Assembly (NCBI RefSeq): GCF_001194135.2
Contig: NC_068986.1
Coordinates: forward strand, 44,066,390 to 44,130,389
Direction: 5' to 3'
Source of the DNA: Octopus bimaculoides
Lineage: Eukaryota
Length of the DNA: 64,000 bases
How positions within the stretch are numbered: position 1 is the stretch's first letter; each line of letters opens with the position of its first letter. Shown here one piece after another: positions 1,231-48,374 of this stretch. Made by a program: the position numbers and the translations under genes. The notes under the pieces were generated by a model. It saw only the letters and a list, made by a program, of their open reading frames with translations. It did not search any database and was not told the DNA's origin.

Positions 1231-1789
1231 TCTAACAAATTTCACTCACAAGGTTGGCCGTCTAAGGAACTATTTACCCTCCTTGTCTCTTGATTTCATA
1301 AAATAAAAAAAAATTCTTTTTTTTCATAGTCATTTGTATTCCCATGTGTAGAATACAAATTCATAAAAATTTTCTGAAAATTCCAAAATATGAAAAAAGT
1401 TATCACCCAAGCTGTAACTGTTACATGCTGGCATTGACAATCTACTATAGCATTGTCTATTTTTCTATCCTAGCTACAGTACACTTACATTATCACATAA
1501 TTATGTTTTTAAGAATCTGTCTTTTGCTTCCATTTTATTTCATACAATTGGTAATCTCTTAGGCCTTAAATTGATGAAACATTGGTATTTTCAGAATGGA
1601 AGATGTAAAGAATTCATGTCCATTCACAAATGTTTACAAGAAACAGCTTTTAGCTGGAAGAAGACAAAATCTGTTGGAAGATGTGTTGCTATGTGTGATA
1701 GGAAATGGTTTCGGTAAATTTAATTTTTATTTTATATAATCTACCAAACTGAAATAGAGATTAAATAATAAAGGTTTTGATAAGTGGTT

Positions 1790-3686: not shown

Positions 3687-3693
<7 letters not shown>

Positions 3694-5083: not shown

Positions 5084-5235
5084 AGGCTATATTTTGAAAA
5101 TAATTTCTAGTGAATTTGCAGAAGTTTTTTTAGTTGATGTTGGTAACATTGCTGAAGTTAATTTTCAGTTTATCAGATTATCACCTGACGTTATTTGGAG
5201 GCTTTCTCCAATGGCTAGAGCCTTCAAAATACCAG
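5084..5235 (+). CDS. Tudor domain C-terminal half (exon, phase 2 to 1); continues the minus-strand exon 21808-21926
   Basis: Strong acceptor (T-run...TTCCAG|) and donor (CAG|GTAAGT). Encodes GYILKIISSEFAEVFLVDVGNIAEVNFQFIRLSPDVIWRLSPMARAFKIP, matching the Tudor/extended-Tudor consensus V.fvDyGn.e.v....lr.l.....lP..A. Confidence 0.88.
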
Positions 5236-5370
5236 GTAAGTTTATTACAATAAAAAGAATAATTATGAGAAAGACTGTTTTTATTTTCAATTCATCCCAT
5301 GAAAAGTTTTGTTTCAAGGCTGTCCATTATATCATAAGAAATATTTAGATTCTGTTTTGTCTTGTTTCAG

Positions 5371-5450
5371 AAAGTTTCAAAGAACTTCCTGGAAATGCTT
5401 TGCAAGAAAATTTATCATTGGTTATTCTTAAACTAGAAACTGCAAGTTCA
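5371..5450 (+). CDS. Exon following the Tudor core (phase 1 to 0)
   Basis: TTGTTTCAG| ... TCA|GTGAGT. Encodes ESFKELPGNALQENLSLVILKLETASS, in frame with 5084-5235. Confidence 0.85.
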
Positions 5451-6109
5451 GTGAGTATTTGATCATATGACTTTTCTGTAGCATAATAAAGCATGAGAAG
5501 TGATGGGTTTGTGCTTTAGTATATATTAAAGAAAATAGGCATCTTTACATAAAGTGAAATGTAGTTAATGCCACTTTTGTTCTCAGGATTCATAAAAAAC
5601 ATGTTACATAAGCTCCAAAATATTTTTCCAATTTTGAAATGAAATTTTAGGAAAATTAATTTTCCTTAAATTAGATGCTGGATAAATGTTCTGCAGTTTT
5701 TTTACATTAACAAATTCTAAGTTCAATTTTTATGTCTCTAGAATGTAAAGAGCTTATTATATAGAACAAGATTCAATTTTACTGCTACACATCTAATTTC
5801 ACAACAATGCAATTATTTGAGAATTGTTAATAACTTTTTTTTTTTCAAGTAAAATTAATCGCCACATCAAAGTGGCAGTTCCATGTTACTACTAGTTTAA
5901 CCCCAGGCAGATCGTCCACCAGCTGGTTATTGGTGCAGCCCTGCACCCTGTACATGTATACAACTAGCTATTTTGCCCTTTTTTTTTTTTAAAGGCTATA
6001 ATAAGTTTGTTAAAAATAAGTGTACAACACTCAAATATTCAGTTGAGCATGGTCTTAAATATAATTTTATATCAACATGTGAATAAAAGTCCATCTGAGA
6101 TTTGGAAAG

Positions 6110-6440
6110 CCTCAGCATAGGTGCAGGCATGGTTGTGTAGTTAAGAAGCTCAGTTTGCAGCAGTATGGTTTCAGGTTCAGTCCAATAGTGCGGCATCTTG
6201 GTCACATGTCTTTTACTATAGCCCTAGGACAACCAATGCTTTGTAAATGAATTTGGTTGATGAAAACTGTCGTCTATTTGTCCCCCCATTGCTGTTTGAC
6301 AATTGGTGTTGGTTTGTGCATGTCCCCATGACTTAGCAGTTTGGCAAAAAGAGACTGATAGAATAAGTACAAGATTTACTATAAGTACTGAAGTCAATTT
6401 GTTTGACAAAACTACAGTACAATGACTGAAACAAATAAAA
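6110..6440 (+). mobile_element. tRNA-derived SINE, family B
   Basis: GCAGGCATGGTTGTGTAGTTAAGAAG...GGTTCAGTCC head and ...GACTGAAACAAATAAAAG tail. Homologous to 58842-59245. Confidence 0.75.
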
Positions 6441-6684
6441 GGTTAATGGTTAAACTAGTTAACAGGATGAACTGTTCGGTTTTCAGCTCTGCTGTACCAT
6501 AGAAAGATTCTTATTAAAATACACCAATGCTTTTTTTCAATATATTATGTATAAAGTCCACATCTAAGCTTTTGTAAAAGGTATGAAAACCATATATTCT
6601 ACTTCTCCCTTCTTTAAAATAAGGGGCTAAATACCTATTCAACATAAATTGATTTTATATTTTTCTGTTGTTTTTTTTTTTCAG

Positions 6685-6717
6685 GGTTATATCACACTAG
6701 TGAAAATTAAAGATTGA
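6685..6717 (+). CDS. Terminal coding exon GYITLVKIKD*
   Basis: Long T-tract acceptor TTTTTTCAG|, phase 0, stop TGA at 6715-6717. Confidence 0.75.
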   Translation, partial: GYITLVKIKD

Positions 6718-7179
6718 TCCCAGATGAGCTGACTCTATAAATATTTTCTTAAATCATGTTTTTTTCTTTTTTTACTGAAATCTTCGAAGACCAAAATATG
6801 GAAGGGTTCCATGCAAACAGCAGTTGAGCATGGGTCAGTCAGTGCTAAGAAGCAGGCAAAGGCTTCCATTAAAGGCACCAAGTCGATCATTGTACTTCAG
6901 ATGACAATTATGTTGATTTAATAATGTTATTTTAACTGTGATCAGTAAGTCCATTGTGCAAATAGTAATGACAAGAAGCAAAAGAATATCTCCACTTGAA
7001 GATGTTTTTACTATGTTTGATGAAGTATGACTGCATTGTATTCAAACTTCTGTTGTGAATGACTTAGCTTTTCATCACACTGAGATCAACAAAGTAAATG
7101 CCAGTAATGCATTGAGAAGAGATTACAGCACTTCTTTTCTGTTTGTTTTTTTTATATATATATTTATATCATACATGAT

Positions 7180-7185
7180 AATAAA
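7180..7185 (+). terminator. Candidate polyadenylation signal AATAAA
   Basis: Lies about 460 nt after the stop at 6717. AATAAA is common in AT-rich DNA. Confidence 0.3.
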
Positions 7186-7187
7186 TC

Positions 7188-7592
7188 TTAACTCTTTCGC
7201 ATGAAGGTTGGTCTGTCAAATATGAGGGGGCACTGCAAAGTTCTTGGCTTTAAGGGTATTATGAAAGGCCTGATCGGAGACCAAACTTCTGAATTCTTTT
7301 ACCGGGCTTAGAAAAACTGAAGGGCCGCTGCAGTAAGTGTGTGAATCTGAGAGGAGAAGATGTTGAACAAAATCATAATTAACTGATCCTCCTGTATTTT
7401 CTTTTACCCAAAGCCAGGGACTTTTCAGCACCTCCTCATATAATGCTTATTTATTCATATTGCTTCAAAATAACCAAGAATTATCTCAAAGCTTCAAGAT
7501 TACAATGATGTGACTGTTTATTTTTAGAAAGACATTGTAGGGAGGTATGAATATTTGGGCCAGATATGGCCAATTTGAATGTTAAAGGGTTA
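7188..7592. mobile_element. piggyBac-like MITE (TTAA-CCCTTT...AAAGGG-TTAA family) interrupted by a mariner MITE
   Basis: Ends TTAACTCTTT / AAAGGGTTAA, with body TAGAAAGACATTGTAGG...GAATATTTGGGCCAGATATGGCC. Confidence 0.75.
7223..7438. mobile_element. Tc1/mariner-type MITE with TA target-site duplication
   Basis: TA|TGAGGGGGCACTGCAAAGTTCTTGGCTT ... AAGCCAGGGACTTTTCAGCACCTCCTCA|TA, about 28-bp imperfect TIRs. Confidence 0.8.
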
Positions 7593-7833
7593 AAGTTATT
7601 ATTTTGGTGCAAAGATAATTCACAAAACCTACTGAAAATTGATAACTTATCAAAGCCAAAGCAGTAGTGTTGATGTATTTGTCTCTCAAGGAAGCATGTA
7701 ATTGACTTACTTATCAAATATATTTCTGCACAAAATTAAATAACATTTCAATTTGCAAGAAGAATTCTTTTTTGTTTTTTATTTTACTAACCAATAAATG
7801 TATGACTAGAGCTGCCATACTCACATTAGCCAA

Positions 7834-7875
<42 letters not shown>

Positions 7876-8152
7876 CAAAACCAATCAAGAAGAAATGAAA
7901 CTTGTATGAAATACCTAGGAAGTGTTGTGAACTGGTTGTTAAAATTATAAGTTCTTTACATGACTCATAAATAAATTTAAAAAATGAAAATTGAAATTAT
8001 AGCTTCAGTGTAGCTTTTATGTAATACAGCAGTTTTGATCACAATCAAAAGCATTTTTTTGTTGAAAATTATATTGTTTTGCTCTTATTATATTTATATA
8101 ATAATTATTCTGATGAATCAATTAGCTTTCTTAATTTTGTTTACTGTGACAG

Positions 8153-8213
8153 GCTGGTGTCTCGTTCTCAGGAAATGTTGTGACCTCAGTTACTTACATG
8201 CCAAGGAAATCAG
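8153..8213 (+). CDS. Candidate alternative exon (phase 0 to 1) AGVSFSGNVVTSVTYMPRKS
   Basis: Acceptor TTTTGTTTACTGTGACAG| and donor CAG|GTAACC. Phase-compatible with 5371-5450. No homology recognised. Confidence 0.3.
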
Positions 8214-8688
8214 GTAACCAACCCTATGAGTCTTAGCACTTGAGACATTAAAGTCCAGGGGTTAATAATGAACATAAATTTATTAATTTATTATGAATAA
8301 CATAAATTAGACTATTGCTCAAATTTACATAGCTTGTGAGGAAAACAAAATTAGAATTTTCTTTTATTTCAAGGTGGGAAAAAAACAATAGATGATCCTT
8401 GGCTGTATACAAATTAAGTACCAGGATGGTAATGCAGTCCATTCCATGTTTTGCTAAAAAAAATGATATTGGAATATTCAAATCTTATACAAGAGATTTT
8501 GTGCTTTTTATCTAATTTTTTAAAGCTTATTCATTTACTTGAAAAATAAAAATTCTTCAACTGCATTTCAAAGGAAATGCAAAAATTTTCTTTATTAAAT
8601 CCATTTTATCAACTTCTTTATTTGATTGCTTTCTTCATTTACTTGAAAATTTAAGAAATCTGCTATTTTACCCCTATTTTTACTTCAG

Positions 8689-8780
8689 TGATAGCTGCTG
8701 AAGAGTTAGGTTTAACAAACTCAAGCACATTTCATTCAGCTAGTCCCTATGGCAGTCCAGTGTGTTCATTTCTACAATAA
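8689..8780 (+). CDS. Candidate alternative terminal exon VIAAEELGLTNSSTFHSASPYGSPVCSFLQ*
   Basis: Strong acceptor CCCCTATTTTTACTTCAG|, phase 1, compatible with 8153-8213. Confidence 0.28.
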
Positions 8781-8804
8781 GCAGATTTTTTTCTTTTTCA
8801 TTGT

Positions 8805-9880
8805 TAGAAAAAATAGCTAGAGTTGATAAAAGCAGGCAGATTGTTTGCTGAATGCTACATTATATCTAGTTCAAATCTGATGTCAACCTTTGCCTTTCAC
8901 TCTTTCAGAGTTGATAATTTAAGTACCAGTGAAACACTGGGGTCACTGTAATTGACTAGTCCCCTCCCCACAAATTTCAGCCCTTGTGCCTTTAGTAGAA
9001 AGGATTATTATTATTATTATTAAACCAGTGAGCTGGCAGAATTGTTAGTATGCTGGACAAAATGCTTAGCAGTATTTTGCCCGCTGCTACATTCTCAGTT
9101 AAAATTCCAGCAAGGTCAACTTTGCCTTTTATCCTTTCAGAGTTGATAAATTAAGTACCAGTGAAACTCAGGGGTCAATGTAATCAACTAGTCCCATCCC
9201 ACTAAATTTCAAGCCTTGTGCTTTTAGGAGGAAGGATTATTATTATTATTAAGGCAGTGAACTGACAGAATCATTAGCGCATCAGATGAAATGCTTAGTG
9301 GCATTTCTTCCAGTTCTTTACATTCTGAGTTCAAATCTTGCCAAGGTTGACTTTGCCTTTCATCATTTCAGGGTTGATGAAATAAATACCAGTTGTGTAT
9401 CGGGACTGATTGTAATCAACTAATTCCCACCCTGTAAAATTGCTGGCATTGTGCCAAAATTTGAAATTATTATTAAGGCAGCAAGCTAGGAGAATTGTTA
9501 GCAAGTTGAACAAAATACTTAGCAGCATTTTCTCATCCTTTCAAGGTCGATAAAGTAAGTGCCAGTTGAGCATTGGGGCCAATGTGACTAACTAATCCCT
9601 CTCCCTAAAATTGCTAACCCTGTTCCAAAGTCAGAATTATTATTTAGGGTAAGGTGCTAGCATGGTTGTTAGTGCATCAGGAAAAAATGCTTTGCAGAAT
9701 TTCTTCCAACTCTATATTCTACTTTCAAATCCCATTAGGGTTGATTCTGAATCTTGTCCTTTCAGATGAAATAAAGTACTAGTCACATCCTGGGGATGGG
9801 AGTGGGATCAGTGGTATAAACTAACCACCTCCCCTTAAAATTACTGGCTTGTGACTAAATTAGAGACCATTATTATTATT
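8805..9880 (+). mobile_element. Five head-to-tail diverged family C SINE copies
   Basis: Units at about 8805-9021, 9022-9250, 9251-9474, 9475-9645 and 9646-9880. Each has the CCTTTC..GATAA..AAGTACCAG core and an (ATT)n tail. Confidence 0.85.
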
Positions 9881-10309
9881 GCTTCAGACTAAATGGAAAA
9901 AGAGCAACATCTATGACTTCTGGGATTTTTTAATACTTCCAAGACTAGAGGAAAGAAACTATGGTTCATGGGTTATCAACCAGAGACTTGTTATGAATTA
10001 TTATAACAAAGTAGGTTCTCCTGAAGGGCATCAAGGACCATATAATGGTATTAATGTTAGCAATAGATTACAACCACCAAATATTACTTTCATCCTTCTA
10101 AAATCAATAGAATTACATTGGCATTGTACTAAATCAAAAGATAAATTTGTTTACTAAGATCCGTCTTTTATATATCTAAGTTTTCAATTGTATCAAATAC
10201 TCTTTTCTGCCAGCAGCAGTTTTTAGCAAGGTCACAAGCTACTTTCAGTATTATCAGAAACATTTTGTTTCACTTACATTACATGCAGTTTGGGGTATTT
10301 AATGGTGCA

Positions 10310-10590
10310 GTTTTAACTAAGAAGAGATATTGAGAAATTAATCTGATGGTATAAAGATACCACCTGTTATTAAGATCACTGAGAAATAATGATGGATACT
10401 AGTATAGGGGTGCTGCAGGATGATAAGGTAATAGAGAAATGAGAAGGTCTCAAAAGTACAAAATAAGGATTAGAAAGGTATTTGAAACAAAACTAAATGG
10501 AGGGAATGTTATCAATATGTGGGCCATGCTGTGTTGAGACACTCCTTTTCTATAATGGACAAAGACAAAGCTACAGGAAATAGAATATCA
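10310..10590 (+). mobile_element. Degenerate R4/Dong-like non-LTR retrotransposon fragment
   Basis: ..RIRKVFETKLNGGNVINMWAML.. resembles RR.RK.L.SKLNG.N.I.AIN.WAV. Confidence 0.5.
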
Positions 10591-12104
10591 TGAGGGATGA
10601 TGGCAAGGTTGGAATGGATTTAGATGAGTAGAGTCCCAGGAAGTGAATATAATACACAAAGCAGTTTTTTCTTGACTTATAGAAGTCAACATTTGTTATT
10701 GTAGTCTTAGCTACATATGGAATCTAACTGTAACTATCATTGAAATGGTTCATTTTTGTGTGATCTAAATTATTTATTCATCTGAATATTTTATTTATAT
10801 ATCCTAGAAAGAAAGAAAACAGAATATAATGGAACATTTTCAAGAGCCTTAAAATTTTGATACATGGCCTTCCTAACGCTTTTGAAATAACTAGGCAGTT
10901 AACAAAAAGTACTCAATGAAACATTCTTTTTCCATTTCAGTCAAGTACAGTAGGACACTGTATTTCAAATTATTCCTAGAGTCTATACAACAGGCTTTCA
11001 TTCACAAGACATGGGGACAATCAGAGTTTAAGTTAGAAGACAACCGACTGAAAGGTTATGCGGTGGAACTGAATCAGGAACCCCATGATTATACAATATA
11101 CAACCACTAAAATCTGATATTGATGAAGTTAGCTGCATTAACAAATTGATATCCTTTCTCTCACAAGAGCCATATCAACATTTACTTGAATGCATCCTTC
11201 AAATGTTCTTAAGGATTCATAAAATGCATTTTAAAGTCCTTGAATTACATCACTACATTGTAAGGTACTGAATTGCAGTAGATTAATAAATGGTGGAAAA
11301 TCGAATGGCACCTTGATTTGTTTCTGACATTGAAAGAAATATTCAGTCAAGCATGGCTGTAAGATGAAGAAGTTCAGTTCACAACCACATGGTTTCTGGT
11401 CTGGTCCAACCACATGTGTTTTTTTTTTTGTTTTTTTTTGCTATAGCTTTCAGCCAATCAATGCCATGTGAGGAAATTTGATGGATGGGACTGCAGGAAG
11501 TCTATTGTATGTGTGTATATATATATGGCGTGTGTATGATATTCCATGCATGTCATCTAAGTGAAGTAGTGTTGATGCTGACAATACCTGTTGACATGAC
11601 TGGCTGCTCTGCACTTTCAAAAACCTCTGGAATAAAAAAAATCCCTTACTCAAAAATAGATAAGATTTGGTAATAGGAAGACCATCTGGCTGTAAAATTT
11701 TGCCTTAAATAACTCCACATCCAAAACCATGTTAGCATGGGAAAATTGTTGTCAAATGAACAAATGATCAGAATATAAGGTCCTTATCAAATTTCTAAGA
11801 ATATCATAAGAACAATGTTACTGAAGTTTAATAAATACAACTGGAGTTAAGCATAATACATAATTTGAATTAGATTAATGGGAGACATGAAATATACTAA
11901 TTAACAATGTCTGAAGTTGACTGAAATATTTCACTCAGTTGTCTAATGAAGTTGTGAGGATTGTCATGTAGTGATAAATGACTTCAAGTTAGCAATGGTT
12001 AATTTTGATTCCTAGTCAAAGCCATCTTCATCTCATTCAGATGTCTAACAGTTTCAGAAAAGGCATGAATATCACAACCCACATTTCTTCCTACCCCTCT
12101 CTCA

Positions 12105-12596
12105 CCCTTTAGCATTCAGATTACTCCGTCAAATGTAATACTTTATTCATATTGTTTTCAATCAAATAAGCAATTACATAATCAAAATCTCAAAACTATA
12201 AGATAATTGAAAATGATCATCATCATTTAATGTAAATTGTCCATGCTGGCATGGGTTGGACAGTTTGACCAGGGCTAATAAGTTGGAAGGTTGCACCAGA
12301 CTCCAGTCTGATTTGGCATGGTTTTCTACATTTGGAAGGGCATCCAGCCATAGAAAAACATGCCAAATCAGACTAGAGTCTGGTCGGTCAAACCATCCAC
12401 CCTATGTCAGCATGGGCAACGGATGTTAAATGATGATTGATTTCAATTAATCATGGTTTATCTCATAGCTTTGTAATTGCTTATTTTTTAGAATGACAAT
12501 GTAGGGGTAGGTGTGAGAGGCCAGATCTGTTTAGTTTGGACATAAAGCAGGTAGAATATTTGGGCAGGATATGGCCAGTTTAAATGCTAAAGGGTT
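12105..12596. mobile_element. piggyBac-like MITE with nested family D retroposon
   Basis: CCCTTTAGCATTCAGATTACT ... AAATGCTAAAGGGTT. Confidence 0.75.
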
Positions 12597-14336
12597 GAAG
12601 ATCTTAGATTTCTTAACTACCTGAGAAAGGCAACAAGACTACAGCATACACACCCACACTGGTGTCATAACAAGCTACATTATATACAAATGCATATTCA
12701 AGAAAAATTATTAGCCAAATATGTGGAGATAAAAAATATTCCCACAAAATGTCTACAAAGTTAATGTTTACTTTATTATAGATATTTTGTGGGTATAACC
12801 AGGACATAGGATGTATTCTACACAATTTGATATGGTAGAATGGTAAGCTTTTGATTCACAAAAATCTGTTTAAAAGCTAAACATTAGAACCATAAAACAC
12901 TGTAAATCATCAGGCACTTCACTGTTTATCAGTCAAGCAAATGCAGATGCATATGCACACATACATACACACAACCACATCCCTTGTAGATAAATATACA
13001 TTCTTTTATAACATTTGGATTGTCAGAATGAAAAATCATTTTTATTTGAATATTTTCTATGAACATTTTCAACATAAGACAATACTGTTAATTTTTTTTT
13101 TCTTTACTTATGGAAAAAGAGTGGGGTGGATATTTTAAAAAACAGAAAAAAATTTATGTTGATTATATACATTGTCTGAGTGAAATACCACATTGGAGGC
13201 ACACTGTGGTCCTTCAACGGCCCTAGAAACCTAAGTTTTACCTATTAGATTTATGTTTTTCTGGAAATTCTGAATCTATCCCAATCTGATAATGAAATAC
13301 AATTATTTTTATGATTGACAGCTGTTCTATCAATAATAAAAACATTTTTCCATTACTTTTCACACTTAATAAATATAACACAAACCATTGCAATAAAATT
13401 TCAAGATAACACTGAAATTTCCATCCTGTTTTTTTTAGACTCCTAATCAAATATATCAATTGACTTTTATTTTTTTTTTTTTTATTATCATAAACAAAAT
13501 TTCCTATTCATACATACATATATACACACAAACAGAAGCCTTTCATTCATTCTCATACATATCAGCTTGGCAGTAAATTCTAACTTATCCATTTAATGTA
13601 AATGATTTCAGCTCAATGTTCATTGCTGCAATCATAGAGAGGTCCCATTAAATACAAAACAAAAAAATAGTAATGATTGCTTGCTAAAACAAGTGAATTT
13701 TAAATATATTTTTAAAACTTAGAAAAAGTGGTGGAAATACAAAATAATCTAAATATTAAAAAATGGGGATTTTTTTTTTTTTTCTTTTTTAGCAGAGATG
13801 TAGACGTTAAAAGCAGATTATCTCCCAAGTGACAAATTATTCAGAAAATTCTTCTATTCTTCAAGTATTTTTAAGTAACCAATTTCACTTTTGGAATAAA
13901 ATACTGAAAAAAAAANNNNNNNNNNNNNNNNNNNNNNNNNNNNNNNNNNNNNNNNNNNNNNNNNNNNNNNNNNNNNNNNNNNNNNNNNNNNNNNNNNNNN
14001 NNNNNNNNNNNNNNNNNNNNNNNNNNNNNNNNNNNNNNNNNNNNNNNNNNNNNNNNNNNNNNNNNNNNNNNNNNNNNNNNNNNNNNNNNNNNNNNNNNNN
14101 NNNNNNNNNNNNNNNNNNNNNNNNNNNNNNNNNNNNNNNNNNNNNNNNNNNNNNNNNNNNNNNNNNNNNNNNNNNNNNNNNNNNNNNNNNNNNNNNNNNN
14201 NNNNNNNNNNNNNNNNNNNNNNNNNNNNNNNNNNNNNNNNNNNNNNNNNNNNNNNNNNNNNNNNNNNNCAGCAGCAGGTATATACAGAAATTAGACACTC
14301 TGGTTACTTAATAGTCTATCTATACTATTTATACTG

Positions 14337-14685
14337 TGAAGGCGCAATAGCCCAGTGGTTAGGGCAGCGGACTTGCGGTCATAGGATCGTGGTTTCGATT
14401 CCCAGACCAGGCGTTGTCAGTGTTTATTGAGCGAAAACACCTAAGGCTCCGGCAGGGGATTGTGGCGAACCCTGCTGGACTCTTTCACCACAACTTTCTC
14501 TCACTCTTACTTCCTGTTTCTGTTGTGCCTGTAATTCAGGCTGAATATCCCCGAGAACTATGTTAAGGGTACACGTGTCTGTGGAGTGCTCAGCCACTTG
14601 CACGTTAATTTCATGAGTAGGCTGTTCCGTTGATCAGATCAGCTGGAACCCTCGACGTCGTAGGCAATGGAGTGCCAACAACAAC
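14337..14685 (+). mobile_element. tRNA-derived SINE, family A ((CAA)n tail)
   Basis: GGCGCAATAGCCCAGTGGTTAGGGCAGCGGACT...GGTTTCGATTCCCAG (A/B-box head) ... GGAGTGCCAACAACAAC. Confidence 0.9.
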
Positions 14686-14744
14686 TATTTATACTAAATA
14701 CAGATAGTTAAAGTTTAAAGATTTACAATTCAATCTACTTCAAT

Positions 14745-15318
14745 CTTTTAAGACTCAGACTACTCAGTCAAATGTAATGCTTATTCATTGACACTGTTTT
14801 GGTGGGATGAAGTAGTGAGAAAGAGTCTATAAATGTTGGTACTCACAGAGGGGATGATAGAACTGAGACTCCTGGCAGTTTGTTGTGCTTTAAAAGACAC
14901 ATCAAAGTGTGGTTACCCTTGCAGACAGGCTCGTCCCTTGCAACCCTCTCCAGCTGAGCATCCCTAATCTTGTGGGTGCTGGTGCCACAGAAAAAGCACC
15001 CATGCCAGTGCTGCGTAAGAGCATCCAGTACACCTTGTAAAATGGTTGGCGTTAGGAAGGGCTCCAGTTGTGGAAACCATACCAAAACAGACATGGAGCC
15101 TGAACAGCCCTTCAGCTGGTCAGCTCCTGTCAAACCGTTCAATCCATGCCAGCATGGAAAACGAACATTAAATGATGATGATGATGATGATATTTCATAA
15201 CTTCAAGATGAGATGATTTATTTTTAGAATAACATTGTAGAGTGGGTGTGAGAGACAGGATTCGGTTAGTGTGAATATAAGACAGGTGGAATATGGCCAG
15301 TTTAAATGCTAAAGGGTT
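14745..15318. mobile_element. piggyBac-like MITE with nested family D retroposon
   Basis: MITE halves at about 14745-14800 and 15200-15318 surround a (GAT)n-tailed insert. Confidence 0.65.
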
Positions 15319-16037
15319 ACAACATTACCTGTTTGTTCCCCAACTAAATTATTTTCTCCCAAATACCATCAATAATACTCTAATCTTCTCCCATTCCTTA
15401 CTGTATCATGCACTACTGTACCTAATTCTAACTTGCTACTAGCCAATCAGAGTGAGTTGGTGTTACTACATTTATTCGTGTATAATACACAACTATCTTT
15501 CAGGTTTTAAGCTAAATAATAGGATGCACATTATACATGAGAACTAAATGTTACTTATTTTTTTCCCTTGTCAAGTGCATCACCACATTTGATGGTAACA
15601 AACTTAACCGGAAGTGTACTACCTTTAATGTACTTTTCATAAATTGTACCTGAAAGTGACATGAATGCACTTCTAGTCCAGTGTACCAGAAAATGATATG
15701 ACTAGAAGTTAACTGATGAGTATCAAAGAGTTAATAGCATTACATTATTCTATGAAAATAAAAATATATTAAAATAAAAATATATTTGGCCCAATTTTCA
15801 AACACAAATCCTTTAGAATTATTGCTGTCAACATTCAGTAGGGAAGGCCAGAATTAATACTACCATTATCTAAATGCGAACATAGATGCAGGCATGGCTG
15901 CATGGTTAAGAACCTTGCATTGCAACCACATGGTTTCTGGTTCAGTCCCACTTAACAGCATCATGGGCAAATGTCTGCCACTATAACCCCAGGTCAACCA
16001 ATGCTTTGTGACTGATTTGGTTGGTAGAAACTATGAG

Positions 16038-16265
16038 GCAAGCTGGCAGAAACGTTAGCACGCCGGACGAAATGCTTAGCAGTATTTCGTCTGCCGCTAT
16101 GTTCTGAGTTCAAATTCCGCCGAGGTTGACTTTGCCTTTCATCCTTTCGGGGGCGATTAAATAAATACCAGTTACGCACCGGGGTCGATGTAATCGACTT
16201 AATCCGTTTGTCTGTCCTTGTTTGTCCCCTCTGTGTGTAGCCCCTTGAAGGCAATACAGAAATAA
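16038..16265 (+). mobile_element. Young family C SINE inserted in a family B SINE
   Basis: GGCAAGCTGGCAGAAACGTTAGCACGCCGG...GAGTTCAAATTCCGCCGAGG with CpGs intact. AAACTATGAGG is repeated at both flanks. Confidence 0.85.
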
Positions 16266-17263
16266 GAAACTATGAGGAAGCCCATCATACATGTATGTGT
16301 GTTTTTGTGTTCGTCTCACACCACTGCTTGACATCCAGTGTTGGTCTGTTTATGTATCCATGACTTAACAGTTCAGCAAAAGACACCAATGGAATAATGG
16401 ACATGATGTTTTGTTTGTTTCTTATAATTTTTTTGTGAGGGGTATGGTTTAAGCTGAGAAAGAAGGGCAGAGCTTTTGATCCTTTTTACAGGGTTCCAAA
16501 GTTGGTAGCAGAAAGAAAAGAAAATAAACTATGATTTATATGTTATCCTTAGACTAAAGACTTGGTAGAAACCAAGCCATGGTAGAAACCAAGCCATGGA
16601 ACCTGATGCAGCACCTGGCCTTACCAGCTCCTGTCAAGCCACCCAATCATGCCAGCATGGAAAACATATCAAATGATGATGATGATGAAGTTTTAGGTTT
16701 CTCTGAGCTAAGACCCCCAGCCCTGAGTGGGACCCCTGTGCCATGGCCCATATTAGCCCATACATAAATCTGTCCTTGGTGTTGACTGAATCACAAAAAA
16801 AAAAGGGAAGAATTTATGTAGTGTGAAAATGAACTATTGCTTATTGCTCCTTTCCTGATCTAGCAATCAGATTTTATAGAGAATAAGAGAAAGGGAGAGA
16901 GTGAAAGAATTACTCACATTTGCTTGAGATGCATCCTCAACAATTTTTATTGTCAATAACTGGTTAACCATAGCAGATGTTAATTTACATTCATCTAGTT
17001 AGAAAATAGCAAAAGAATATTTTAGATGGAGGAAGTACTGTAAACTAATTTTTAAAAAAGACTATACTGTTTAAAATGTAAACAAATTAAGTAAATTTAA
17101 GATTTAATTCTCCAATTCTAACTTGAGATAATATATTTAGAGGGAGATGAATGCAATAGGTATTGGACTTTTGATGACCAAATTTTGTTATATTAACAGA
17201 AAGAAGATAAAATACAACAGTAAGTCAATGTTTGGAGGTTGTTAATGTTGTTTAGTTTTAGAG

Positions 17264-17645
17264 TGGAGGCGCAATGGCCCAGTGGTTAGGGCAGCGGACT
17301 CGTTGTCATAGGATCATGGTTTCGATTCCCAGACCGAACGTTGTGAGTGTTTATTGAGCGAAAACACCTAAAGCTCCACGAGGCTCCGGCAGGAGATGGT
17401 GGTGAACCCTGCTGTACTCTTCCACCACAACTTTCTCTCACTCTTACTTCCTGTTTTTGTTGTGCCTGTAATTCAAAGGGTCAGCCTTGTCACACTGTGT
17501 CACGCTGAATATCCCTGAGAACTACATTAAGGGTACACGTGTCTGTGGAGTGCTCAGCCACTTGCACGTTAATTTCACGAGCAGGGTGTTCCGTTGATCG
17601 GATTAACTGGAACCCTCAACGTCGTAAGCGACGGAGTACCAACTA
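17264..17645 (+). mobile_element. Family A SINE
   Basis: Full-length homologue of 14337-14685. Confidence 0.9.
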
Positions 17646-17666
17646 CTAAACTACTTAGTTTTAGAT

Positions 17667-17954
17667 CAGCAGTTCCTAAACCTTTTAGGGCTGCAGCACC
17701 TGGGCTACACTCCTAGCGCCCCCTCCCCCCAGCACTCCATTCAGCATCACAAACATAGATCATTTTCTGCAGCAAATTCAAAACAACTGTATTTGACAAA
17801 TAAAACTTAACCTAATTAACCCATTATTTTGTTGCTTTTACATCCATCGCCCTCATTTGGTCACCCCATTATCACCTGACTTTTCTTTAATGCCACTCCT
17901 AGATCTTTCTACCACTCCTAGGGGAAACAGTACCATTCACTTTGGGAACCACTA
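17667..17954. mobile_element. hAT (Charlie-like) MITE
   Basis: CAGCAGTTCCTAAACC ... TTTGGGAACCACTA. Degenerate 8-bp TSD TTTTAGAT/ATTTATAT. Left part is homologous to 37569-37750. Confidence 0.75.
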
Positions 17955-17984
17955 ATTTATATCAACCTTCACCAAATACACTTA

Positions 17985-18701
17985 GATGCTCACTTTGCAA
18001 CCACATGGTTTTAGGTTCAGTCCCACTGTGCACCACCATGGGCAAGTGTCTTCTACTATAAACCCTGGACTGACCAATACCTTGTGAGTAAATCCGGTAG
18101 AGGGAAATTATGGAAGCCTATTATATAATATATATATATGTGTTTGTGACATATTTCAACTTCTAAAACACAAACATATTTTAACTAACCTAAAGTTTGC
18201 TTATGCCTAAACACTGTTTGTGTTGATACTGCTGAATATTTATATTTTTAGAAGATGGAGACTGAGGATGACATATGTTGATGCCCTAAAGGACAGACAC
18301 TGGTCTCTGGGAGACACAGGACATGGCAGCAATGATGAGGGACAAAGACCACTGGAGAGAACTCACCCATGGATCTCAGCAATTTTACCTGCCCTAGATA
18401 TATATATATATATAGTCAGTAAATCATAAATCTGAAAGAGAAGCACACTCTAAGTTATAGAGCAGTAGAGTATTTAGATACAGATAGTTATGGCTGGTCT
18501 ATGCAGTTACCCAGGGTTTCATGTCCATAAAGTGCTTAGCTTTACAATGCCCCATCAGACCCTAATGGCCAATGGCCAAAACCTCTTTGAAGAGAGGTTA
18601 TAGGCCATAGGACATTAGGGTCTGATAAGATGTTGTAAAGCTAAGTGCTTTATGGGTAACTCCATAGACCAACCATAACTATATTTATATATATATATAT
18701 A

Positions 18702-18766
<65 letters not shown>

Positions 18767-18950
18767 CAACTGCTTGTGTTTGTCACCCCACCACACCACT
18801 TGATAACTAGTGTCAGTTTAGTGGTTCAGCAAAAGAGACTAACAAAGTAAGAACCAGACTTAAAAATTAAGTATTGGTCTTGATTTGTTCAAGATGGTGC
18901 CCCAGCATGACCACTGTCCAAAGCTTGAAACAAGTAAAAGATAAAAGTCT
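17985..18950 (+). mobile_element. Family B SINE split by nested RTE 3' end and palindromic element
   Basis: Head at 17985-18135, tail at 18763-18950. RTE end ..RMTYVDALK..MMRDKDHWRE.. at about 18240-18398. Confidence 0.7.
18484..18682. repeat. ~200-bp foldback palindrome
   Basis: ATAGTTATGGCTGGTCTATG...AACCTCT ttga AGAGAGGTT...CATAGACCAACCATAACTAT. Confidence 0.9.
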
Positions 18951-20439
18951 ATCTAGATCTACACTATCTCAGGTGTCTTTTCTTCTTTTTTTAAGACAGT
19001 AGCGTGTGACTTGAGAGCGGTCTGGCTGCTACTTTTTGCAAGTGAAGTGTCTCCTCAAAAGCTTCCTTTGTTAACTTAAAGGTTTTCAGTAAGGGAAAGT
19101 TTATTAACCCTCCTTTACCATATTCCTGCCTGCATGTTCATACTGGTTTTGAAAATAACACTGTGTAACAAAATCTTTTTTTATTTATTTATTTATACTT
19201 TTTGGTCAGTAAGTGTTATTTCCTATTTGCTTCTATCTAGAAATGAAAGGAAATTATGACTATTCCTTTCAAATTTTGCTTTTGTGACCTGAACATCAAC
19301 TTTTTTGACACTGACCTATTTTCCATTACACTTTAGACAGATACAGCACTGAGTTGCTGAAGCAGAATTTTCTAGGACTTTTTAGAAGTTTCAAGAATGT
19401 TCTGGCAACACAGATGGCAGTATAAATACAGGGATCATAAGTTCAACAGTTCAGTTTTACTTCTAGCTATCCAAGTGGGGACTATGTTAAAGAAAGTAAA
19501 ATTCAAAGGAAATATTAGCCATTTTTCATACTTTCTAGGGAGTAAGCAAATAGGAAATAACAGTTGCTATCCAAGAGTAATCAATAATGTGGAAGGATTT
19601 AGAGAAATAACTTTATTGGTGTTAAACTGTTGTTTGGAACATAACAAAATGTTTTTATATAAAATTATAATGAACAGCTTTAATTTAAATATAATCAACA
19701 TCTTGAGCTAATATTGCATTTTTAGCATGATTTCTATGACTGGATGCCCTTCCTAACACCAACTATTTTATAGAATATACTAGGTGTATTTTAGTGGTAC
19801 TAGCACTACAGAGTTTGTCATGATGTCAGTAAGTGTAAAGAGCTCTCTCAAGCCCTGCATTGTCAATGCTGGAATCGATTATCACTCATTTATAAAGCAT
19901 AATGGATGTTGTGGAGTCAGCACTGTTGGAGCCGCCATGCAGGCTGCAAGGCAAAAGAGAACTCCTATGATGGGTGGAATAGATTTATTGTTGTGAAAGG
20001 ATGGTAATGGAGAGTGAATAGTGTTGGGATGAGAAAAATGAAGACAGGAGAAAGGAGAAGACGGAGAGCAATATCAGGGACTAGCAAGAAGGGAAGCAGG
20101 GAACAAGGTGGTCACCAAAGCCAATGATTGAAAGAAATACTTCTCAATAGCTGTTAGGTATTACAACCTTTAGAAGGCAAGTCACATTACATGACTTACT
20201 TACAGATGGAATTATTTAACTACAAACTATTCACACTTTACAGTAAAAATAGTTTAATGTAATGAAAGTCATCTATTTATCTATAAAATATTTTCCTCTG
20301 CAATTCAGAATTTTAAACCAATAGGGCCCTTAAAATCAACTTTACACAGAAAATAATTGAATTTATTCAGTTACTTCAGTAAATTATTATGCATGAAGAT
20401 ATTAAAATTATTTGCTATTTCATATCAAAATACTTGTTT

Positions 20440-20665
20440 TTAACCCTTTAGCATTTAAATTGGCCATATCTAGCCCAAATATTCTACTCATTTTGCATTC
20501 AAACCAGCCAGATCTGGTCTCTTATATTTACCCTGCAATATCATTCTAAAAGTAAACAATCACATCATTGAACTCTCAACGCTATGAGATAATGTCTCAT
20601 TAGTTCCAAACAGTGTGAATAAATAACCATCATATTTAACAGAGTAATTTGAATGCAAAGAGTTG
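20440..20665. mobile_element. piggyBac-like MITE
   Basis: TTAACCCTTTAGCATTTAAAT...GAATGCAAAGAGTT. Further copies lie at about 33945-34187, 40300-40529, 49082-49310, 51988-52178, 52290-52521, 53938-54160 and 57357-57582. Confidence 0.8.
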
Positions 20666-21012
20666 ATCTAGTAAAGTTTTTTTGCCTATGGAACCAGACT
20701 TCTTTTATACAGAAGTAGTTTAGTATATTTTGAATAGTGATTTTGAATAGTGATTTAAATGAATCCAGTAGAATCCTAATGAAATTTTGATTTAGAATCT
20801 AGAAGCAAAAAACAAGAATAAAGGAATACATTTAATCCAGACAACCAACTTTTTGTGTTCTGAATTAGAAAAGTGCAATTCAAGTAATTGCAGCGAAGTT
20901 TCCATTGTAATTTCTCAAATATGACATAAACACATTTCTCACTCCTTCCTCTTCAGAAAAGTAGTCCTTTGGAATCCTCATTCATATTTTTCCCTGCAAA
21001 TGTTGATTTATA

Positions 21013-21400
21013 CATTGGATGGCACTCCATTGGTTACAACGACGAGGGTTCCAGTTGATCCGATCAACAGAACAGCCTGCTCGTGAAATTAACGTGCAAG
21101 TGGCTGAGCATTCCACAGACATGTGTACTCTTAACGTAGTCCTTGGAGAGTTTCAGCGTGACACAGAGTGTGAAAAGGCTGGCCCCTTTGAAATACAGGT
21201 ATAACAGAAACAGGAAGAAAAAGTGAGAGAAAGATGTGGTGAAAGAATACAACAGGGTTCGCCACCACTCCCTGCCGGAGCCTCGTGGAGCTTTAGATGT
21301 TTTCGCTCAATAAACACTCACAACGCCCGGTCTGGGAATTGAAACCGCGATCCTATGACCGCGAGTCCGCTGCCCTAACCACTGGGCCATTGCACCTCCA
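21013..21400 (-). mobile_element. Family A SINE
   Basis: Reverse complement of the 17264 family. Confidence 0.9.
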
Positions 21401-21807
21401 CTGACTTATACATATGCTCAAATTGAACACCAATCATATTAATTTCACCAGTGTTGGAAGGTGTAGAAAGATTATAGGAACTACTCTTCCCCTCTTGTTT
21501 AGCTAATCAAAAATATATTTTTAAAAATTAATATACTAAATAAGCAAAGATATACTAACCAACACATTTGAAGATTTTGGTGTGAGGAAGAAATTTCCCA
21601 TATATGGGAGGGTGCCTCATAAAATATCTTGACTACCTCAATATTGCTAAGGTCAATATCCACAAAAAACCCACAAAAAACTGACTCCCATTTTGCTGAA
21701 TAAGTTCATGATATAACCATTATTATAAAAAAACAATGTTCTGGAAAATTCTTTGAAAATAGAAAATGGATTAAAATATTAATGAGTTATAATTAAGTCT
21801 TACTTAC

Positions 21808-21926
21808 TGGCTCCAATCATCCCAATATAAAGCGACACATTTATCATCAATTGGTGGATTATACTCTGGCCAATCATTGACAGACAACATCAATTCCTCG
21901 TGTAACTTTGAAAATTCCAAGGGACT
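21808..21926 (-). CDS. Tudor domain N-terminal half (exon, phase 0 to 2)
   Basis: Acceptor CTTTATATTTTAG| and donor CCA|GTAAGT. Encodes SPLEFSKLHEELMLSVNDWPEYNPPIDDKCVALYWDDWS, matching P..g..C.Aly..d.W. Confidence 0.85.
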
Positions 21927-27091: not shown

Positions 27092-27415
27092 CTTCTTCAT
27101 CGAATTTCTTACGATGTTCATTTTTCACACTGCTAGAGCCTTCCTCGGAATGTTTTGACTTGATATCAGCTAGCTTGTTGCTGTTGTTATATTGACCATT
27201 TCTTCGTTTCTTTTTGCCATTCAAAAATCTGTGAGAATCCTGCATCGACATATGCCTATCATTTGTTCTATTTACATAATTTGATCTTCTGTCAGGATGA
27301 ACATGATTTGAACTATGAGATTCTTCAATTAAATCACTGGACTGAATACTACACTGCCTTAGTCTTTCATTTATAGAACTCATTCCATCCACTGAAGAAA
27401 CCTTTTTATCAAATT
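27092..27415 (-). CDS. Low-complexity linker exon (phase 1 to 1)
   Basis: CTTATTTTCATTTCAG| ... GAAG|GTAATT. 108 codons open: EFDKKVSSVDG...KKFDEE. In phase with 35873-36054. Confidence 0.85.
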
Positions 27416-35872: not shown

Positions 35873-36054
35873 CTCTAACTTTAGGAGTTTTCTTCTTCAG
35901 TTTAGATCCAGTTAGCTTAGCTTCTTTATTGGTTACATAAGCTGGATCAACAAAGGCCACAAATAAATTGTGATTAAGATATTGTGCCTTGTCATATTTT
36001 TCAATAGCCATATAAGGATCTTGTAAGTTAGAAAAATAAAGAAAAGCCTGAGTG
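35873..36054 (-). CDS. RRM2 C-terminal part (RNP1, helix 2, beta 4) (phase 2 to 1)
   Basis: TATATTTTCAG| ... AGAG|GTAAGT. Encodes TQAFLYFSNLQDPYMAIEKYDKAQYLNHNLFVAFVDPAY...KVR. Confidence 0.88.
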
Positions 36055-39147: not shown

Positions 39148-39524
39148 NNNNNNNNNNNNNNNNNNNNNNNNNNNNNNNNNNNNNNNNNNNNNNNNNNNNN
39201 NNNNNNNNNNNNNNNNNNNNNNNNNNNNNNNNNNNNNNNNNNNNNNNNNNNNNNNNNNNNNNNNNNNNNNNNNNNNNNNNNNNNNNNNNNNNNNNNNNNN
39301 NNNNNNNNNNNNNNNNNNNNNNNNNNNNNNNNNNNNNNNNNNNNNNNNNNNNNNNNNNNNNNNNNNNNNNNNNTATAAACAAGGCTGTATTTTGATGTAT
39401 ATAATGCCTGAGTTCAATGCAAATCAATTCATGTTAAAAAAACTCCAACTGCATAACAGATTTCAAACTCATAAATATAATGACACTAAAAATATAAAAA
39501 TAAAAATGAAATTATTTTACTAAC

Positions 39525-39601
39525 CTCCTTTTAGAGTTTGAATTATTTACCATTTCAATTTGTGTAACATTATAGTCCCAAAATAATGCATTCAACTCGC
39601 C
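39525..39601 (-). CDS. RRM2 middle exon (phase 0 to 2)
   Basis: AAATATTTTCAG| ... GGAG|GTTAGT. Encodes GELNALFWDYNVTQIEMVNNSNSKR. Confidence 0.88.
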
Positions 39602-42955: not shown

Positions 42956-43019
<64 letters not shown>

Positions 43020-43072
43020 TGACACATACATGCACATGTGCACACAGACATACAGGCACACATAAGACTTAC

Positions 43073-48341: not shown

Positions 48342-48374
<33 letters not shown>

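What the first reader, a model, noticed from the sequence alone, without database searches (positions are those of the whole stretch)
5084..21926. One Tudor domain encoded half on each strand, in exact splice phase
Seen in the sequence: the minus-strand RRM-RRM gene reaches exon 21926-21808, ending ..KCVALYWDDWS-CA|GTAAGT (phase 2). I found no continuation on the minus strand below it. The plus-strand exon 5084 begins A-GGC-TAT. Joining them gives CAA GGC TAT and ..CVALYWDDWSQGYILKIISSEFAEVFLVDVGNIAEV..LSPMARAFKIP, a continuous Tudor fold, followed by 5371-5450 and a stop at 6717. I found no Tudor N-half on the plus strand in 1-5083. Established knowledge: Drosophila mod(mdg4) builds mRNAs from exons on opposite strands by trans-splicing. 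Inference: there are four candidates. (a) An assembly mis-orientation involving the 353-N gap at 13916, which is the most likely a priori. (b) A real intronic inversion. (c) Inter-strand trans-splicing. (d) Tail-to-tail paralogues whose missing exons lie outside the window. The 1.6-kb 3' exon block would not fit in a 353-nt gap with the same introns.
Basis: partly seen in the sequence, partly recalled or inferred. Interest (0 to 1): 0.85.

Follow-up and report, generated by a model that had tools for sequence, protein, structure and literature searches.

The report
Two convergent paralogues, not a split domain
The "Tudor domain split between two DNA strands" is really two neighbouring, tail-to-tail duplicate octopus genes: one has its own complete Tudor domain on one strand, and the other keeps only fossil pieces of it, so this is ordinary gene-family evolution.

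Summary
The quoted sequences, splice sites and phases are real, and the joined peptide does score as a Tudor domain.

- **Missed exon.** The plus strand has its own Tudor N-half exon at 1595-1713. It is 119 nt and ends in phase 2. It joins 5084 in cis in annotated proteins of O. bimaculoides (LOC106871557), O. sinensis, O. vulgaris and Argonauta hians.
- **Minus-strand exon.** Exon 21926-21808 is the paralogous 119-nt exon of the convergent neighbour LOC106871559, an RRM-RRM gene with no Tudor domain in its product. The two genes share intron positions and phases, which explains the "exact splice phase".
- **mRNA evidence.** A spliced RNA contig shows the minus gene joining exon 9 directly to this exon in another frame. 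It stops at 21876-21874, 66 nt before the donor.
- **Assembly.** Two independent gapless assemblies show the same order and orientation, including across the 353-N gap. That gap corresponds to about 315 bp of intron in O. sinensis. Mis-orientation is refuted. Nothing calls for an inversion or trans-splicing.
- **Extra finding.** The minus gene keeps further fossil Tudor-region exons at 16994-16918 and 13903-~12955. Their splice sites are conserved with Argonauta. The C-half exon is missing.

Interest is low.

The parts
1595..1713 (+). Tudor N-half exon (exon 9, 119 nt, phase 0 to 2) of the plus-strand RRM-RRM-Tudor gene LOC106871557.
   Evidence: Sequence and splice sites. tblastn of XP_014773546.2, aa 360-400, 97.6% identity. 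The orthologous exon is 119 nt with the same phases in O. sinensis. The cis join scores 39.2 bits on TUDOR.
5084..5235 (+). Tudor C-half exon (exon 10, 152 nt, phase 2 to 1) of LOC106871557.
5371..5450 (+). Penultimate coding exon (80 nt, phase 1 to 0) of LOC106871557.
6685..6717 (+). Terminal coding segment GYITLVKIKD plus stop of LOC106871557.
21808..21926 (-). Exon 10 of the minus-strand RRM-RRM gene LOC106871559. It is a fossil Tudor N-half exon (119 nt). In the mRNA it is read in another frame as ESLGIFKVTRGIDVVCQ then stop; the stop codon is at 21876-21874. The GTAAGT donor is retained.
   Evidence: It is conserved, with acceptor and donor, in Argonauta hians, where the Tudor frame carries a stop.
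27092..27415 (-). Exon 9 of LOC106871559 (324 nt, phase 1 to 1). It ends in phase 1, whereas the paralogue's equivalent exon ends in phase 0. This puts the fossil exon out of frame.
35873..48520 (-). Coding exons 1-8 of LOC106871559 (the two RRMs and the linker): 48520-48466, 48320-48280, 46622-46552, 45304-45198, 43258-43073, 41001-40766, 39601-39525, 36054-35873.
   Evidence: Exact exon model. Spliced RNA contig L004. Pfam RRM_1 57.6 bits, two stretches.
16918..16994 (-). Fossil penultimate exon (77 nt, aactag| ... AAT|gtgagt) of the minus gene. It is probably now a 3' UTR exon.
   Evidence: An island conserved between Octopus and Argonauta, with its donor. The joined peptide matches the C-terminus of a Tudor-bearing family member.
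12955..13903 (-). Fossil terminal exon (tttttttttcag|TATTTT..., ancestral frame YFIPKVKLVT then stop), followed by about 1 kb of conserved presumed 3' UTR. The 3' end is approximate.
   Evidence: About 70% identity over about 1 kb to Argonauta. The polypyrimidine tract and CAG acceptor are conserved, and alignment is lost upstream of them.
13916..14268 (.). Assembly gap (353 N). It lies in the intron or intergenic sequence directly upstream of the fossil terminal exon's acceptor and corresponds to 315 bp in O. sinensis.

Best explanation
The window (Octopus bimaculoides CM046606.1, starting at 44,066,390) holds the 3' ends of two ancient paralogues arranged tail to tail.

**Plus-strand gene.** LOC106871557 is an intact RRM-RRM-Tudor (TDRD10-like) gene. 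Its Tudor domain is encoded entirely in cis by exons 1595-1713, 5084-5235, 5371-5450 and 6685-6717, together with an exon just upstream of the window.

**Minus-strand gene.** LOC106871559 has kept the two RRMs but lost the Tudor domain from its product.
- Exon 9 ends in phase 1, whereas the paralogue's equivalent exon ends in phase 0.
- The old Tudor N-half exon (21926-21808) is therefore translated out of frame for 17 codons and then stops.
- The C-half exon is gone.
- Two further ancestral exons survive as fossils at 16994-16918 and 13903-~12955.

**Why the halves fit.** Both genes inherited the same intron positions and phases. The fossil N-half exon of one gene therefore fits the C-half exon of the other in phase and in fold. 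The fit reflects shared ancestry, not a functional join.

**Shown and inferred.** The cis exon, the paralogous exon structure, the mRNA frame and the orientation in independent assemblies are shown. It is inferred that the fossil exons now serve as spliced 3' UTR exons.
For: 1. **Annotated proteins.** XP_014773546.1 and .2 (O. bimaculoides), XP_036359752.1 (O. sinensis), CAI9724516.1 (O. vulgaris) and GAB1607306.1 (Argonauta hians) all read ...KWFR|GYIL... across the cis junction.
2. **The cis exon.** It is at 1595-1713 with canonical splice sites. The cis join scores 39.2 bits on TUDOR against 31.9 for the chimera.
3. **Exon tables.** The Tudor gene runs 73, 44, 71, 137, 275, 77, 173, 179, 119, 152, 80, 33 nt. 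The RRM gene runs 55, 41, 71, 107, 186+236, 77, 182, 324, 119 nt. Phases are identical up to exon 8 or 9, and the N-half exon is 119 nt in both.
4. **RNA contig.** Logan contig SRR32601320_23136 (L004) matches the window at 97-100% per aligned block (100% in seven of ten). It splices 27092 to 21926 and reads ...DEEESLGIFKVTRGIDVVCQ then stop.
5. **Isoforms.** None of the 13 cluster members or isoforms of the minus gene carries a Tudor domain.
6. **Independent assemblies.** O. sinensis GCA_006345805.1 and O. vulgaris GCA_951406725.2 have no N in these loci. The O. vulgaris assembly was built from ONT long reads, and its annotation used Iso-Seq (PMC10700109). Both show the same convergent layout, 13.8-14.3 kb from stop to stop, and full colinearity with the window across both gaps.
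7. **Argonauta hians.** It has the same synteny and the same out-of-frame terminal coding exon. Its ancestral Tudor frame carries a stop.
8. **Fossil exons.** Their acceptor and donor sites are conserved. The joined peptide is 39% identical over 36 ungapped residues to the extreme C-terminus of a multi-RRM Tudor protein, P0025 (E 1e-4).
Against: - The RNA contig L004 ends exactly at 21808, the last base before GTAAGT. This suggests the donor is used and that the assembly graph branches there. I could not see what it joins.
- The fossil N-half exon is not significantly similar to the neighbour's N-half by BLAST alone. MAFFT gives 24-26% identity. Its homology rests on the Tudor profile, on exon length, position and phase, and on 38-40% identity to P0025.
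- I found no transcript contig for the plus gene's 1713|5084 junction. That junction rests on annotation in four species.
- The ancestral frame of the fossil exon is still open in the three Octopus species. They are too close for this to be informative: the exon is identical apart from one 3-nt indel.
Confidence: 0.93

Rival explanations
1. Assembly mis-orientation. The contig 1-13915 was flipped during scaffolding, so all Tudor exons really lie on one strand as a single gene.
For: The contig is bounded by N-gaps on both sides: a 3264-N gap ends at window position 0, and the 353-N gap starts at 13916. GCA_001194135.2 carries gaps of the same sizes as the window at this locus, so it gives no independent check of local orientation.
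Against: - Gapless O. sinensis and O. vulgaris sequences are colinear and co-oriented with the window across both gaps.
- The upstream exons of the plus gene, left of the 3264-N gap, are on the same strand as 1595-6717.
- Argonauta shows the same convergent layout.
- Flipping the contig would break the plus gene, which is annotated as one cis gene in four species.
Confidence: 0.01
2. Inter-strand trans-splicing of the mod(mdg4) type. The donor at 21808 is joined to the acceptor at 5084 to build a Tudor-containing protein from the minus-strand RRM gene.
For: - Phase compatibility and a Tudor-like joined peptide.
- The mRNA contig stops exactly at the donor.
- No canonical poly(A) signal lies within about 970 nt downstream of the donor.
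Against: - In the observed mRNA the exon is entered in phase 1 and hits a stop 66 nt before the donor, so the join would not be translated.
- Acceptor 5084 has a cis donor at 1713 that is used in all annotated models.
- Conserved cis acceptors exist downstream on the minus strand.
- In Argonauta the Tudor frame of the exon carries a stop.
- No chimeric ORF appeared in the protein searches. This is a weak negative: short ORFs are not held, and the 27-aa control was also absent.
Confidence: 0.01
3. A real inversion inside a single ancestral gene split its Tudor domain between strands.
For: Opposite-strand halves lie about 16.6 kb apart (21808 to 5084).
Against: - There are two complete sets of paralogous exons (RRM1, RRM2, N-half, penultimate, terminal), one set per strand.
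- The two genes are only about 24% identical in protein sequence, which indicates an old duplication rather than a split.
- The arrangement is shared with Argonauta.
Confidence: 0.01
4. The minus gene still makes a Tudor-containing isoform in cis, using unannotated exons: a phase-correcting exon between 27092 and 21926, and a diverged C-half exon between 21808 and 16994.
For: - The ancestral frame of the exon is open in three Octopus species, and their one indel is in frame.
- The donor is conserved.
- Window 18712-20528 has no aligned counterpart in O. sinensis.
Against: - A Pfam scan of all three frames of 21927-27085 finds nothing.
- tblastn with three family members finds neither an upstream Tudor exon nor a C-half on the minus strand in four species.
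- Argonauta has a stop in that frame.
- No annotated isoform has a Tudor domain.
Confidence: 0.03

Closest known systems
TDRD10 (tudor domain-containing 10): RRM plus a single extended Tudor domain, function unknown (table in PMC12147562)
   Same: The plus-strand gene has RRM_1 (two stretches) and one TUDOR domain. Its O. vulgaris orthologue carries the source name "domain-containing 10-like".
   Different: It has two RRMs rather than one. Orthology to vertebrate TDRD10 was not tested by phylogeny. The minus-strand paralogue has no Tudor domain in its product.
Drosophila mod(mdg4) trans-splicing of exons from opposite strands (cited from established knowledge)
   Same: Exons on opposite strands fit in phase and would encode a continuous domain.
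   Different: Here each strand has its own paralogous exon, the acceptor has a cis donor, the observed mRNA is out of frame with a stop before the donor, and no chimeric product was found.
Domain loss after gene duplication, with fossil (decayed) exons kept in the transcript
   Same: A duplicate keeps the N-terminal domains (RRMs) and loses the C-terminal domain. Leftover exons are still recognisable by length, phase, splice sites and residual sequence similarity.
   Different: The fossil exons keep conserved splice sites across Octopus and Argonauta. This suggests they were re-used as terminal coding and 3' UTR exons rather than simply decaying. That re-use is inferred, not shown.
Scaffold contig mis-orientation in gap-rich short-read assemblies
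   Same: The contig is flanked by N-gaps on both sides.
   Different: Its orientation agrees with two independent gapless assemblies.

Membership tests
TDRD10-like (RRM + single extended Tudor) | At least one RRM domain | tested here: met
   Pfam RRM_1, two stretches each: 41.4 bits in P0016, 56.1 bits in P0003, 57.6 bits in P0009.
TDRD10-like (RRM + single extended Tudor) | A single Tudor domain in the protein product | tested here: met
   This result is for the plus-strand gene. TUDOR scores 36.5 bits in P0016 and 33.2 bits in P0003, one stretch each. The minus-strand gene product P0009 has no TUDOR hit and fails this feature.
TDRD10-like (RRM + single extended Tudor) | Orthology to vertebrate TDRD10 by phylogeny | not tested
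   The only support is a source-given name on the O. vulgaris protein. No tree was built.
Inter-strand trans-splicing (mod(mdg4) type) | The acceptor exon lacks a cis donor exon on its own strand | tested here: not met
   The cis donor exon at 1595-1713 joins 5084 in annotated proteins of four species.
Inter-strand trans-splicing (mod(mdg4) type) | The donor exon is read in the frame that continues into the acceptor exon | tested here: not met
   The RNA contig L004 enters the exon in phase 1 and stops at 21876-21874.
Inter-strand trans-splicing (mod(mdg4) type) | Chimeric transcripts spanning the junction exist | tested here: inconclusive
   No chimeric ORF appeared. Raw reads could not be searched, and L004 ends exactly at the donor.
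Assembly mis-orientation artefact | The contig is bounded by gaps, so its orientation is unconstrained locally | tested here: met
   A 3264-N gap ends at window position 0, and a 353-N gap starts at 13916.
Assembly mis-orientation artefact | Orientation disagrees with independent assemblies | tested here: not met
   All aligned blocks are on the + strand and colinear with O. sinensis and O. vulgaris.
Convergent paralogue pair with domain decay | Shared exon-intron architecture (intron positions and phases) between the two genes | tested here: met
   Exon and phase tables. The RRM regions align at E 5e-14.
Convergent paralogue pair with domain decay | Residual homologous exons of the lost domain lie in the expected order on the gene's own strand | tested here: met
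   N-half at 21926-21808, penultimate exon at 16994-16918 and terminal exon from 13903. The C-half exon is absent.

The most novel reading that the evidence does not exclude
The donor at 21808 is conserved from Octopus to Argonauta, and the RNA contig ends exactly there. It might, in a minority of transcripts, be trans-spliced to the neighbouring paralogue's acceptor at 5084. This would yield chimeric RNAs between convergent paralogues. They would be non-coding past the stop, or coding only if an unknown upstream exon restores the frame. My evidence makes this unnecessary and unlikely but cannot exclude it without read-level data. A tamer and likelier novelty is that the fossil Tudor exons are kept as spliced 3' UTR exons. 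That would put the stop codon 66 nt upstream of two exon junctions, a layout that could expose the mRNA to nonsense-mediated decay.
Probability: 0.01. Interest if true: 0.8.

Novelty: already known. Interest (0 to 1): 0.1.

Why it matters
It matters mainly as a caution. Paralogous genes inherit intron positions and phases. A leftover exon in one copy can therefore look perfectly spliceable, in phase and in fold, to an exon of its neighbour, even on the other strand.

Both genes are already annotated in RefSeq for three Octopus species.

The one modest new point is how the RRM-only paralogue lost its Tudor domain:
- the frame shifts at the exon 9 to exon 10 junction;
- the C-half exon is lost;
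- three other ancestral exons survive with conserved splice sites, probably re-used as the terminal coding exon and 3' UTR exons.

This gives a clean, datable example of domain loss, older than the Octopus-Argonauta split. It is of minor interest to people who study Tudor-family or cephalopod gene evolution.

Tried and rejected
- **First protein search.** The 91-aa chimera returned nothing. This was a limit of the word index, not true absence. A longer composite query found the annotated genes.
- **Hand search for RRM motifs and exon candidates** by regex and splice rules found nothing useful. The annotated proteins then gave exact models.
- **Pfam on raw frames.** A scan of X-masked frames of 21927-27085 found no Tudor piece.
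- **Look-ups of P0001 and P0002** were not on record. Longest-isoform members worked.
- **L002 and L003** turned out to be the same assembly as the window, with gaps of the same sizes. I did not count them as independent.
- **Search for a C-half fossil on the minus strand.** I used the neighbour's, the O. sinensis and the P0025 peptides in four species. Only chance-level hits appeared.
- **Exact look-up of hypothetical chimeric ORFs.** They were absent, but the 27-aa positive control was absent too, so the test is weak.
- **Third homology search, for orthologues of the RRM-only gene outside Octopus.** It returned only its own cluster.
- **P0025 against the region upstream of the minus gene.** No hits, so P0025 is not the third neighbouring gene.
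- **Reading the 77-nt fossil exon as an in-frame alternative to exon 10** (exon 9 joined to 16994). This is in frame in O. bimaculoides, but the acceptor phase differs in Argonauta. I do not claim it as coding.
- **Suspected hAT-like transposase fragments at about 37.9-38.7 kb.** Pfam gave no hit.

Full report
**1. The observation**

- On the minus strand, exon 21926-21808 follows a ttttag acceptor. It reads SPLEFSKLHEELMLSVNDWPEYNPPIDDKCVALYWDDWS plus CA, then GTAAGT.
- On the plus strand, an exon starts at 5084 after ccag and runs to 5235. It is followed by 5371-5450 and 6685-6717 (GYITLVKIKD, then stop).
- The window has five N-gaps, including 13916-14268.
- The inter-strand join scores 31.9 bits on Pfam TUDOR (profile positions 30-120 of 121). 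The C-half alone scores 21.2 bits, and the N-half alone scores nothing.
- Ten shuffled or reversed N-halves fused to the same C-half score 19.0-19.7 bits, and their alignment begins only at profile position 74-75.

The minus-strand exon is therefore a real Tudor N-half, and the phase fit is real.

**2.

A composite query found annotated octopus proteins (sequences; names).

The plus-strand exons belong to O. bimaculoides LOC106871557 (XP_014773546.1 and .2). Its product reads ...NGRCKEFMSIHKCLQETAFSWKKTKSVGRCVAMCDRKWFR|GYILKIISSEF.... The peptide before the bar is encoded in the window on the plus strand at 1595-1713 (ttttcag|AATGG...TTTCG|gtaaat). The final CG joins the A at 5084 to give Arg.

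This cis join scores 39.2 bits on TUDOR, better than the chimera. The same junction is present in O. sinensis XP_036359752.1, O. vulgaris CAI9724516.1 (named "domain-containing 10-like") and Argonauta hians GAB1607306.1.

**3. The minus-strand gene**

It is LOC106871559 (XP_014773547.1 and XP_052824666.1, 443 aa). It has two RRM stretches and no Tudor domain.

Its ten coding exons map exactly to 48520-48466, 48320-48280, 46622-46552, 45304-45198, 43258-43073, 41001-40766, 39601-39525, 36054-35873, 27415-27092 and 21926-21874.

Exon 9 ends in phase 1. Exon 10 is therefore read as (E)SLGIFKVTRGIDVVCQ and then stops at 21876-21874.

A Logan RNA contig (SRR32601320_23136, L004, 1515 nt) is a fully spliced mRNA of this gene. 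It matches the window at 97-100% per aligned block (100% in seven of ten), against 96-100% for the other two Octopus species. It contains the direct 27092|21926 join.

None of the 13 cluster members or isoforms carries a Tudor domain. The alternative ends are an extra exon after exon 8 or intron retention.

**4. Why the halves fit**

The two genes are old paralogues: about 24% identity over the RRM-RRM region, E 5e-14. They share the same exon architecture.

| Gene | Exon lengths in nt (phases) |
|---|---|
| Tudor gene (O. sinensis) | 73 (0>1), 44 (1>0), 71 (0>2), 137 (2>1), 275 (1>0), 77 (0>2), 173 (2>1), 179 (1>0), 119 (0>2), 152 (2>1), 80 (1>0), 33 |
| RRM gene | 55 (0>1), 41 (1>0), 71 (0>2), 107 (2>1), 186+236 (1>1>0), 77 (0>2), 182 (2>1), 324 (1>1), then a 119-nt exon |

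The N-half exon is 119 nt in both genes and ends in phase 2 in its ancestral frame. Phase compatibility with the neighbour's C-half exon is thus inherited, not functional.

The fossil exon is 24-26% identical to the neighbour's N-half and 38-40% identical to the N-half of another family member, P0025. P0025 is a Logan transcript ORF of 896 aa with several RRMs and a Tudor domain; its N-half reads ...KKCVALYQEEWYRA.

**5. The gap and orientation**

L002 and L003 (GCA_001194135.2) have gaps of the same sizes as the window, so they are the same sequence and not independent. The window begins immediately after a 3264-N gap, so contig 1-13915 is gap-bounded on both sides. This is the situation in which a flip could occur.

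It did not occur.
- Merged gapless loci from O. sinensis GCA_006345805.1 and O. vulgaris GCA_951406725.2 are colinear and co-oriented with window 1-28000 and with the upstream part of the plus gene. The O. vulgaris assembly used ONT long reads, and its annotation used Iso-Seq (PMC10700109).
- Both species show the same convergent layout.
- Across the 353-N gap, window 13915 corresponds to O. sinensis 52039 and window 14272 to 52355. The gap therefore stands for about 315 bp of AT-rich non-coding sequence.
- The next 348 bp in the window (14336-14683) is a SINE insertion with a target-site duplication. It is absent in O. sinensis.
- Argonauta hians has the same synteny: a CPSF_A-like gene, then the Tudor gene, then a convergent RRM gene.

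**6. The rest of the decayed Tudor region**

No C-half fossil exists on the minus strand in any of the four species.

Comparison with Argonauta shows three conserved islands between the two stop codons:
- The fossil N-half exon. Its acceptor and its GT(A/G)AGT donor are conserved. In Argonauta the Tudor frame carries a stop, while the mRNA frame ESLAIFKVTREIDVCQ-stop is kept.
- A 77-nt exon at 16994-16918 (aactag|...AAT|gtgagt), with its donor conserved.
- A block of about 1 kb starting at 13903, preceded by a conserved polypyrimidine tract and CAG. Upstream of that point the alignment is lost.

Read in their ancestral frames, the last two give (D)ECKLTSAMVNQLLTIKIVEDASQAN|YFIPKVKLVT-stop. This aligns without gaps to residues 860-895 of the 896-aa P0025 (39% identity, E 1e-4). 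Its exon boundary falls where the neighbour has ...ETASS|GYITLVKIKD-stop.

The minus gene thus retains fossils of three of the five ancestral Tudor-region exons, in order and on its own strand.

I infer that these fossils are now spliced 3' UTR exons. The supporting points are:
- L004 ends exactly at 21808;
- no AATAAA or ATTAAA lies within about 970 nt downstream of the donor;
- the splice sites are conserved.

This inference is not demonstrated.

**7. Trans-splicing**

It is not needed, because acceptor 5084 has a cis donor. It would not yield a Tudor protein from the observed mRNA, because a stop lies 66 nt upstream of the donor. No chimeric ORF was found in the word-indexed search with a composite query that included the chimera, in an exhaustive HMMER search of 1.84 billion representatives, or by exact look-up. 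The last test is weak because the short control was also absent. Read-level junction counts would settle the matter.

**8. Verdict**

The sequence observation is real but incomplete. The split-domain reading is wrong. What is there is a pair of already-annotated convergent paralogues, one of which has lost its Tudor domain and keeps fossil exons. The novelty is small and so is the interest.

Noticed in passing
window 14336-14683 (+); also 17271-17637 (+), 21014-21393 (-), 24768-25136 (-): Copies of a tRNA-derived SINE (head GGCGCAATAGCCCAGTGGTTAGGGCAGCGGACT...). The copy at 14336-14683 is flanked by a CTATTTATACT target-site duplication and is absent at the orthologous O. sinensis site, so it is a lineage-specific insertion next to the assembly gap.
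   Followed up: partly
window 4212-4613 (-): A fragment of a reverse transcriptase (Pfam RVT_1, 50.1 bits). It lies inside the 3.4-kb intron between the plus gene's Tudor N-half and C-half exons.
   Followed up: yes
L003 29792-31377 (upstream of the window; RefSeq XP_014773546.2, aa 223-265): The O. bimaculoides model carries SLYWVHLMEFLPTPFLQIEQSYLPDGICDVSAFLLIETL where O. sinensis, O. vulgaris and Argonauta have the conserved RRM2 core STQSFIYFWNTFDLKRAIK. The stretch sits beside a 753-N gap (L003 30494-31246). It looks like a gap-induced mis-annotation.
   Followed up: partly
window about 58465 (+) and onward; L007 1-7333: A third gene lies head to head with the RRM gene. Its tiny first coding exon, ATGAGGCAGCAG|gtaagt, is conserved with O. 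vulgaris, where the model is a 368-aa RRM_1 protein. This may be a local cluster of RRM genes.
   Followed up: partly
L004 nt 1-99: The first 99 nt of the RRM-gene mRNA contig (5' UTR) match nothing in the window or in the fetched flanks of any species. An upstream non-coding first exon must lie further away.
   Followed up: no
window 43073 / 43079 (-): Exon 5 of the RRM gene uses two alternative donors 6 nt apart. They give the ...DHQGTYRSS... and ...DHQDRSS... isoforms. The RNA contig uses 43079.
   Followed up: partly
window 23634-23762 and 23791-23919 (-), flanking the 10-N gap 23773-23782: Identical open stretches (TETERSLLYIRMYICVCVYVCVSVFVPLALLDNRCWCVYVPVT) occur on both sides of the 10-N gap. 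This is either a tandem repeat copy or a duplication artefact of gap closure.
   Followed up: no
window 21847-21852 (-) versus O. sinensis / O. vulgaris: O. bimaculoides has GATGAT where the other two Octopus species have GAT. This is a 3-nt indel, in frame for the dead Tudor reading, and it lies in what is now 3' UTR. Otherwise the 119-nt exon is identical in the three species.
   Followed up: yes
window 18712-20528: About 1.8 kb between the fossil N-half exon and the 77-nt fossil exon has no aligned counterpart in O. sinensis or O. vulgaris. It is an insertion in O. bimaculoides or a deletion in the others. I did not characterise its content.
   Followed up: no
window 37900-38700 (-): Open stretches here looked to me like transposase fragments (e.g. 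CLLLHTEVQWLTKGNSLKV), but Pfam gave no hit. Their identity is unresolved.
   Followed up: partly
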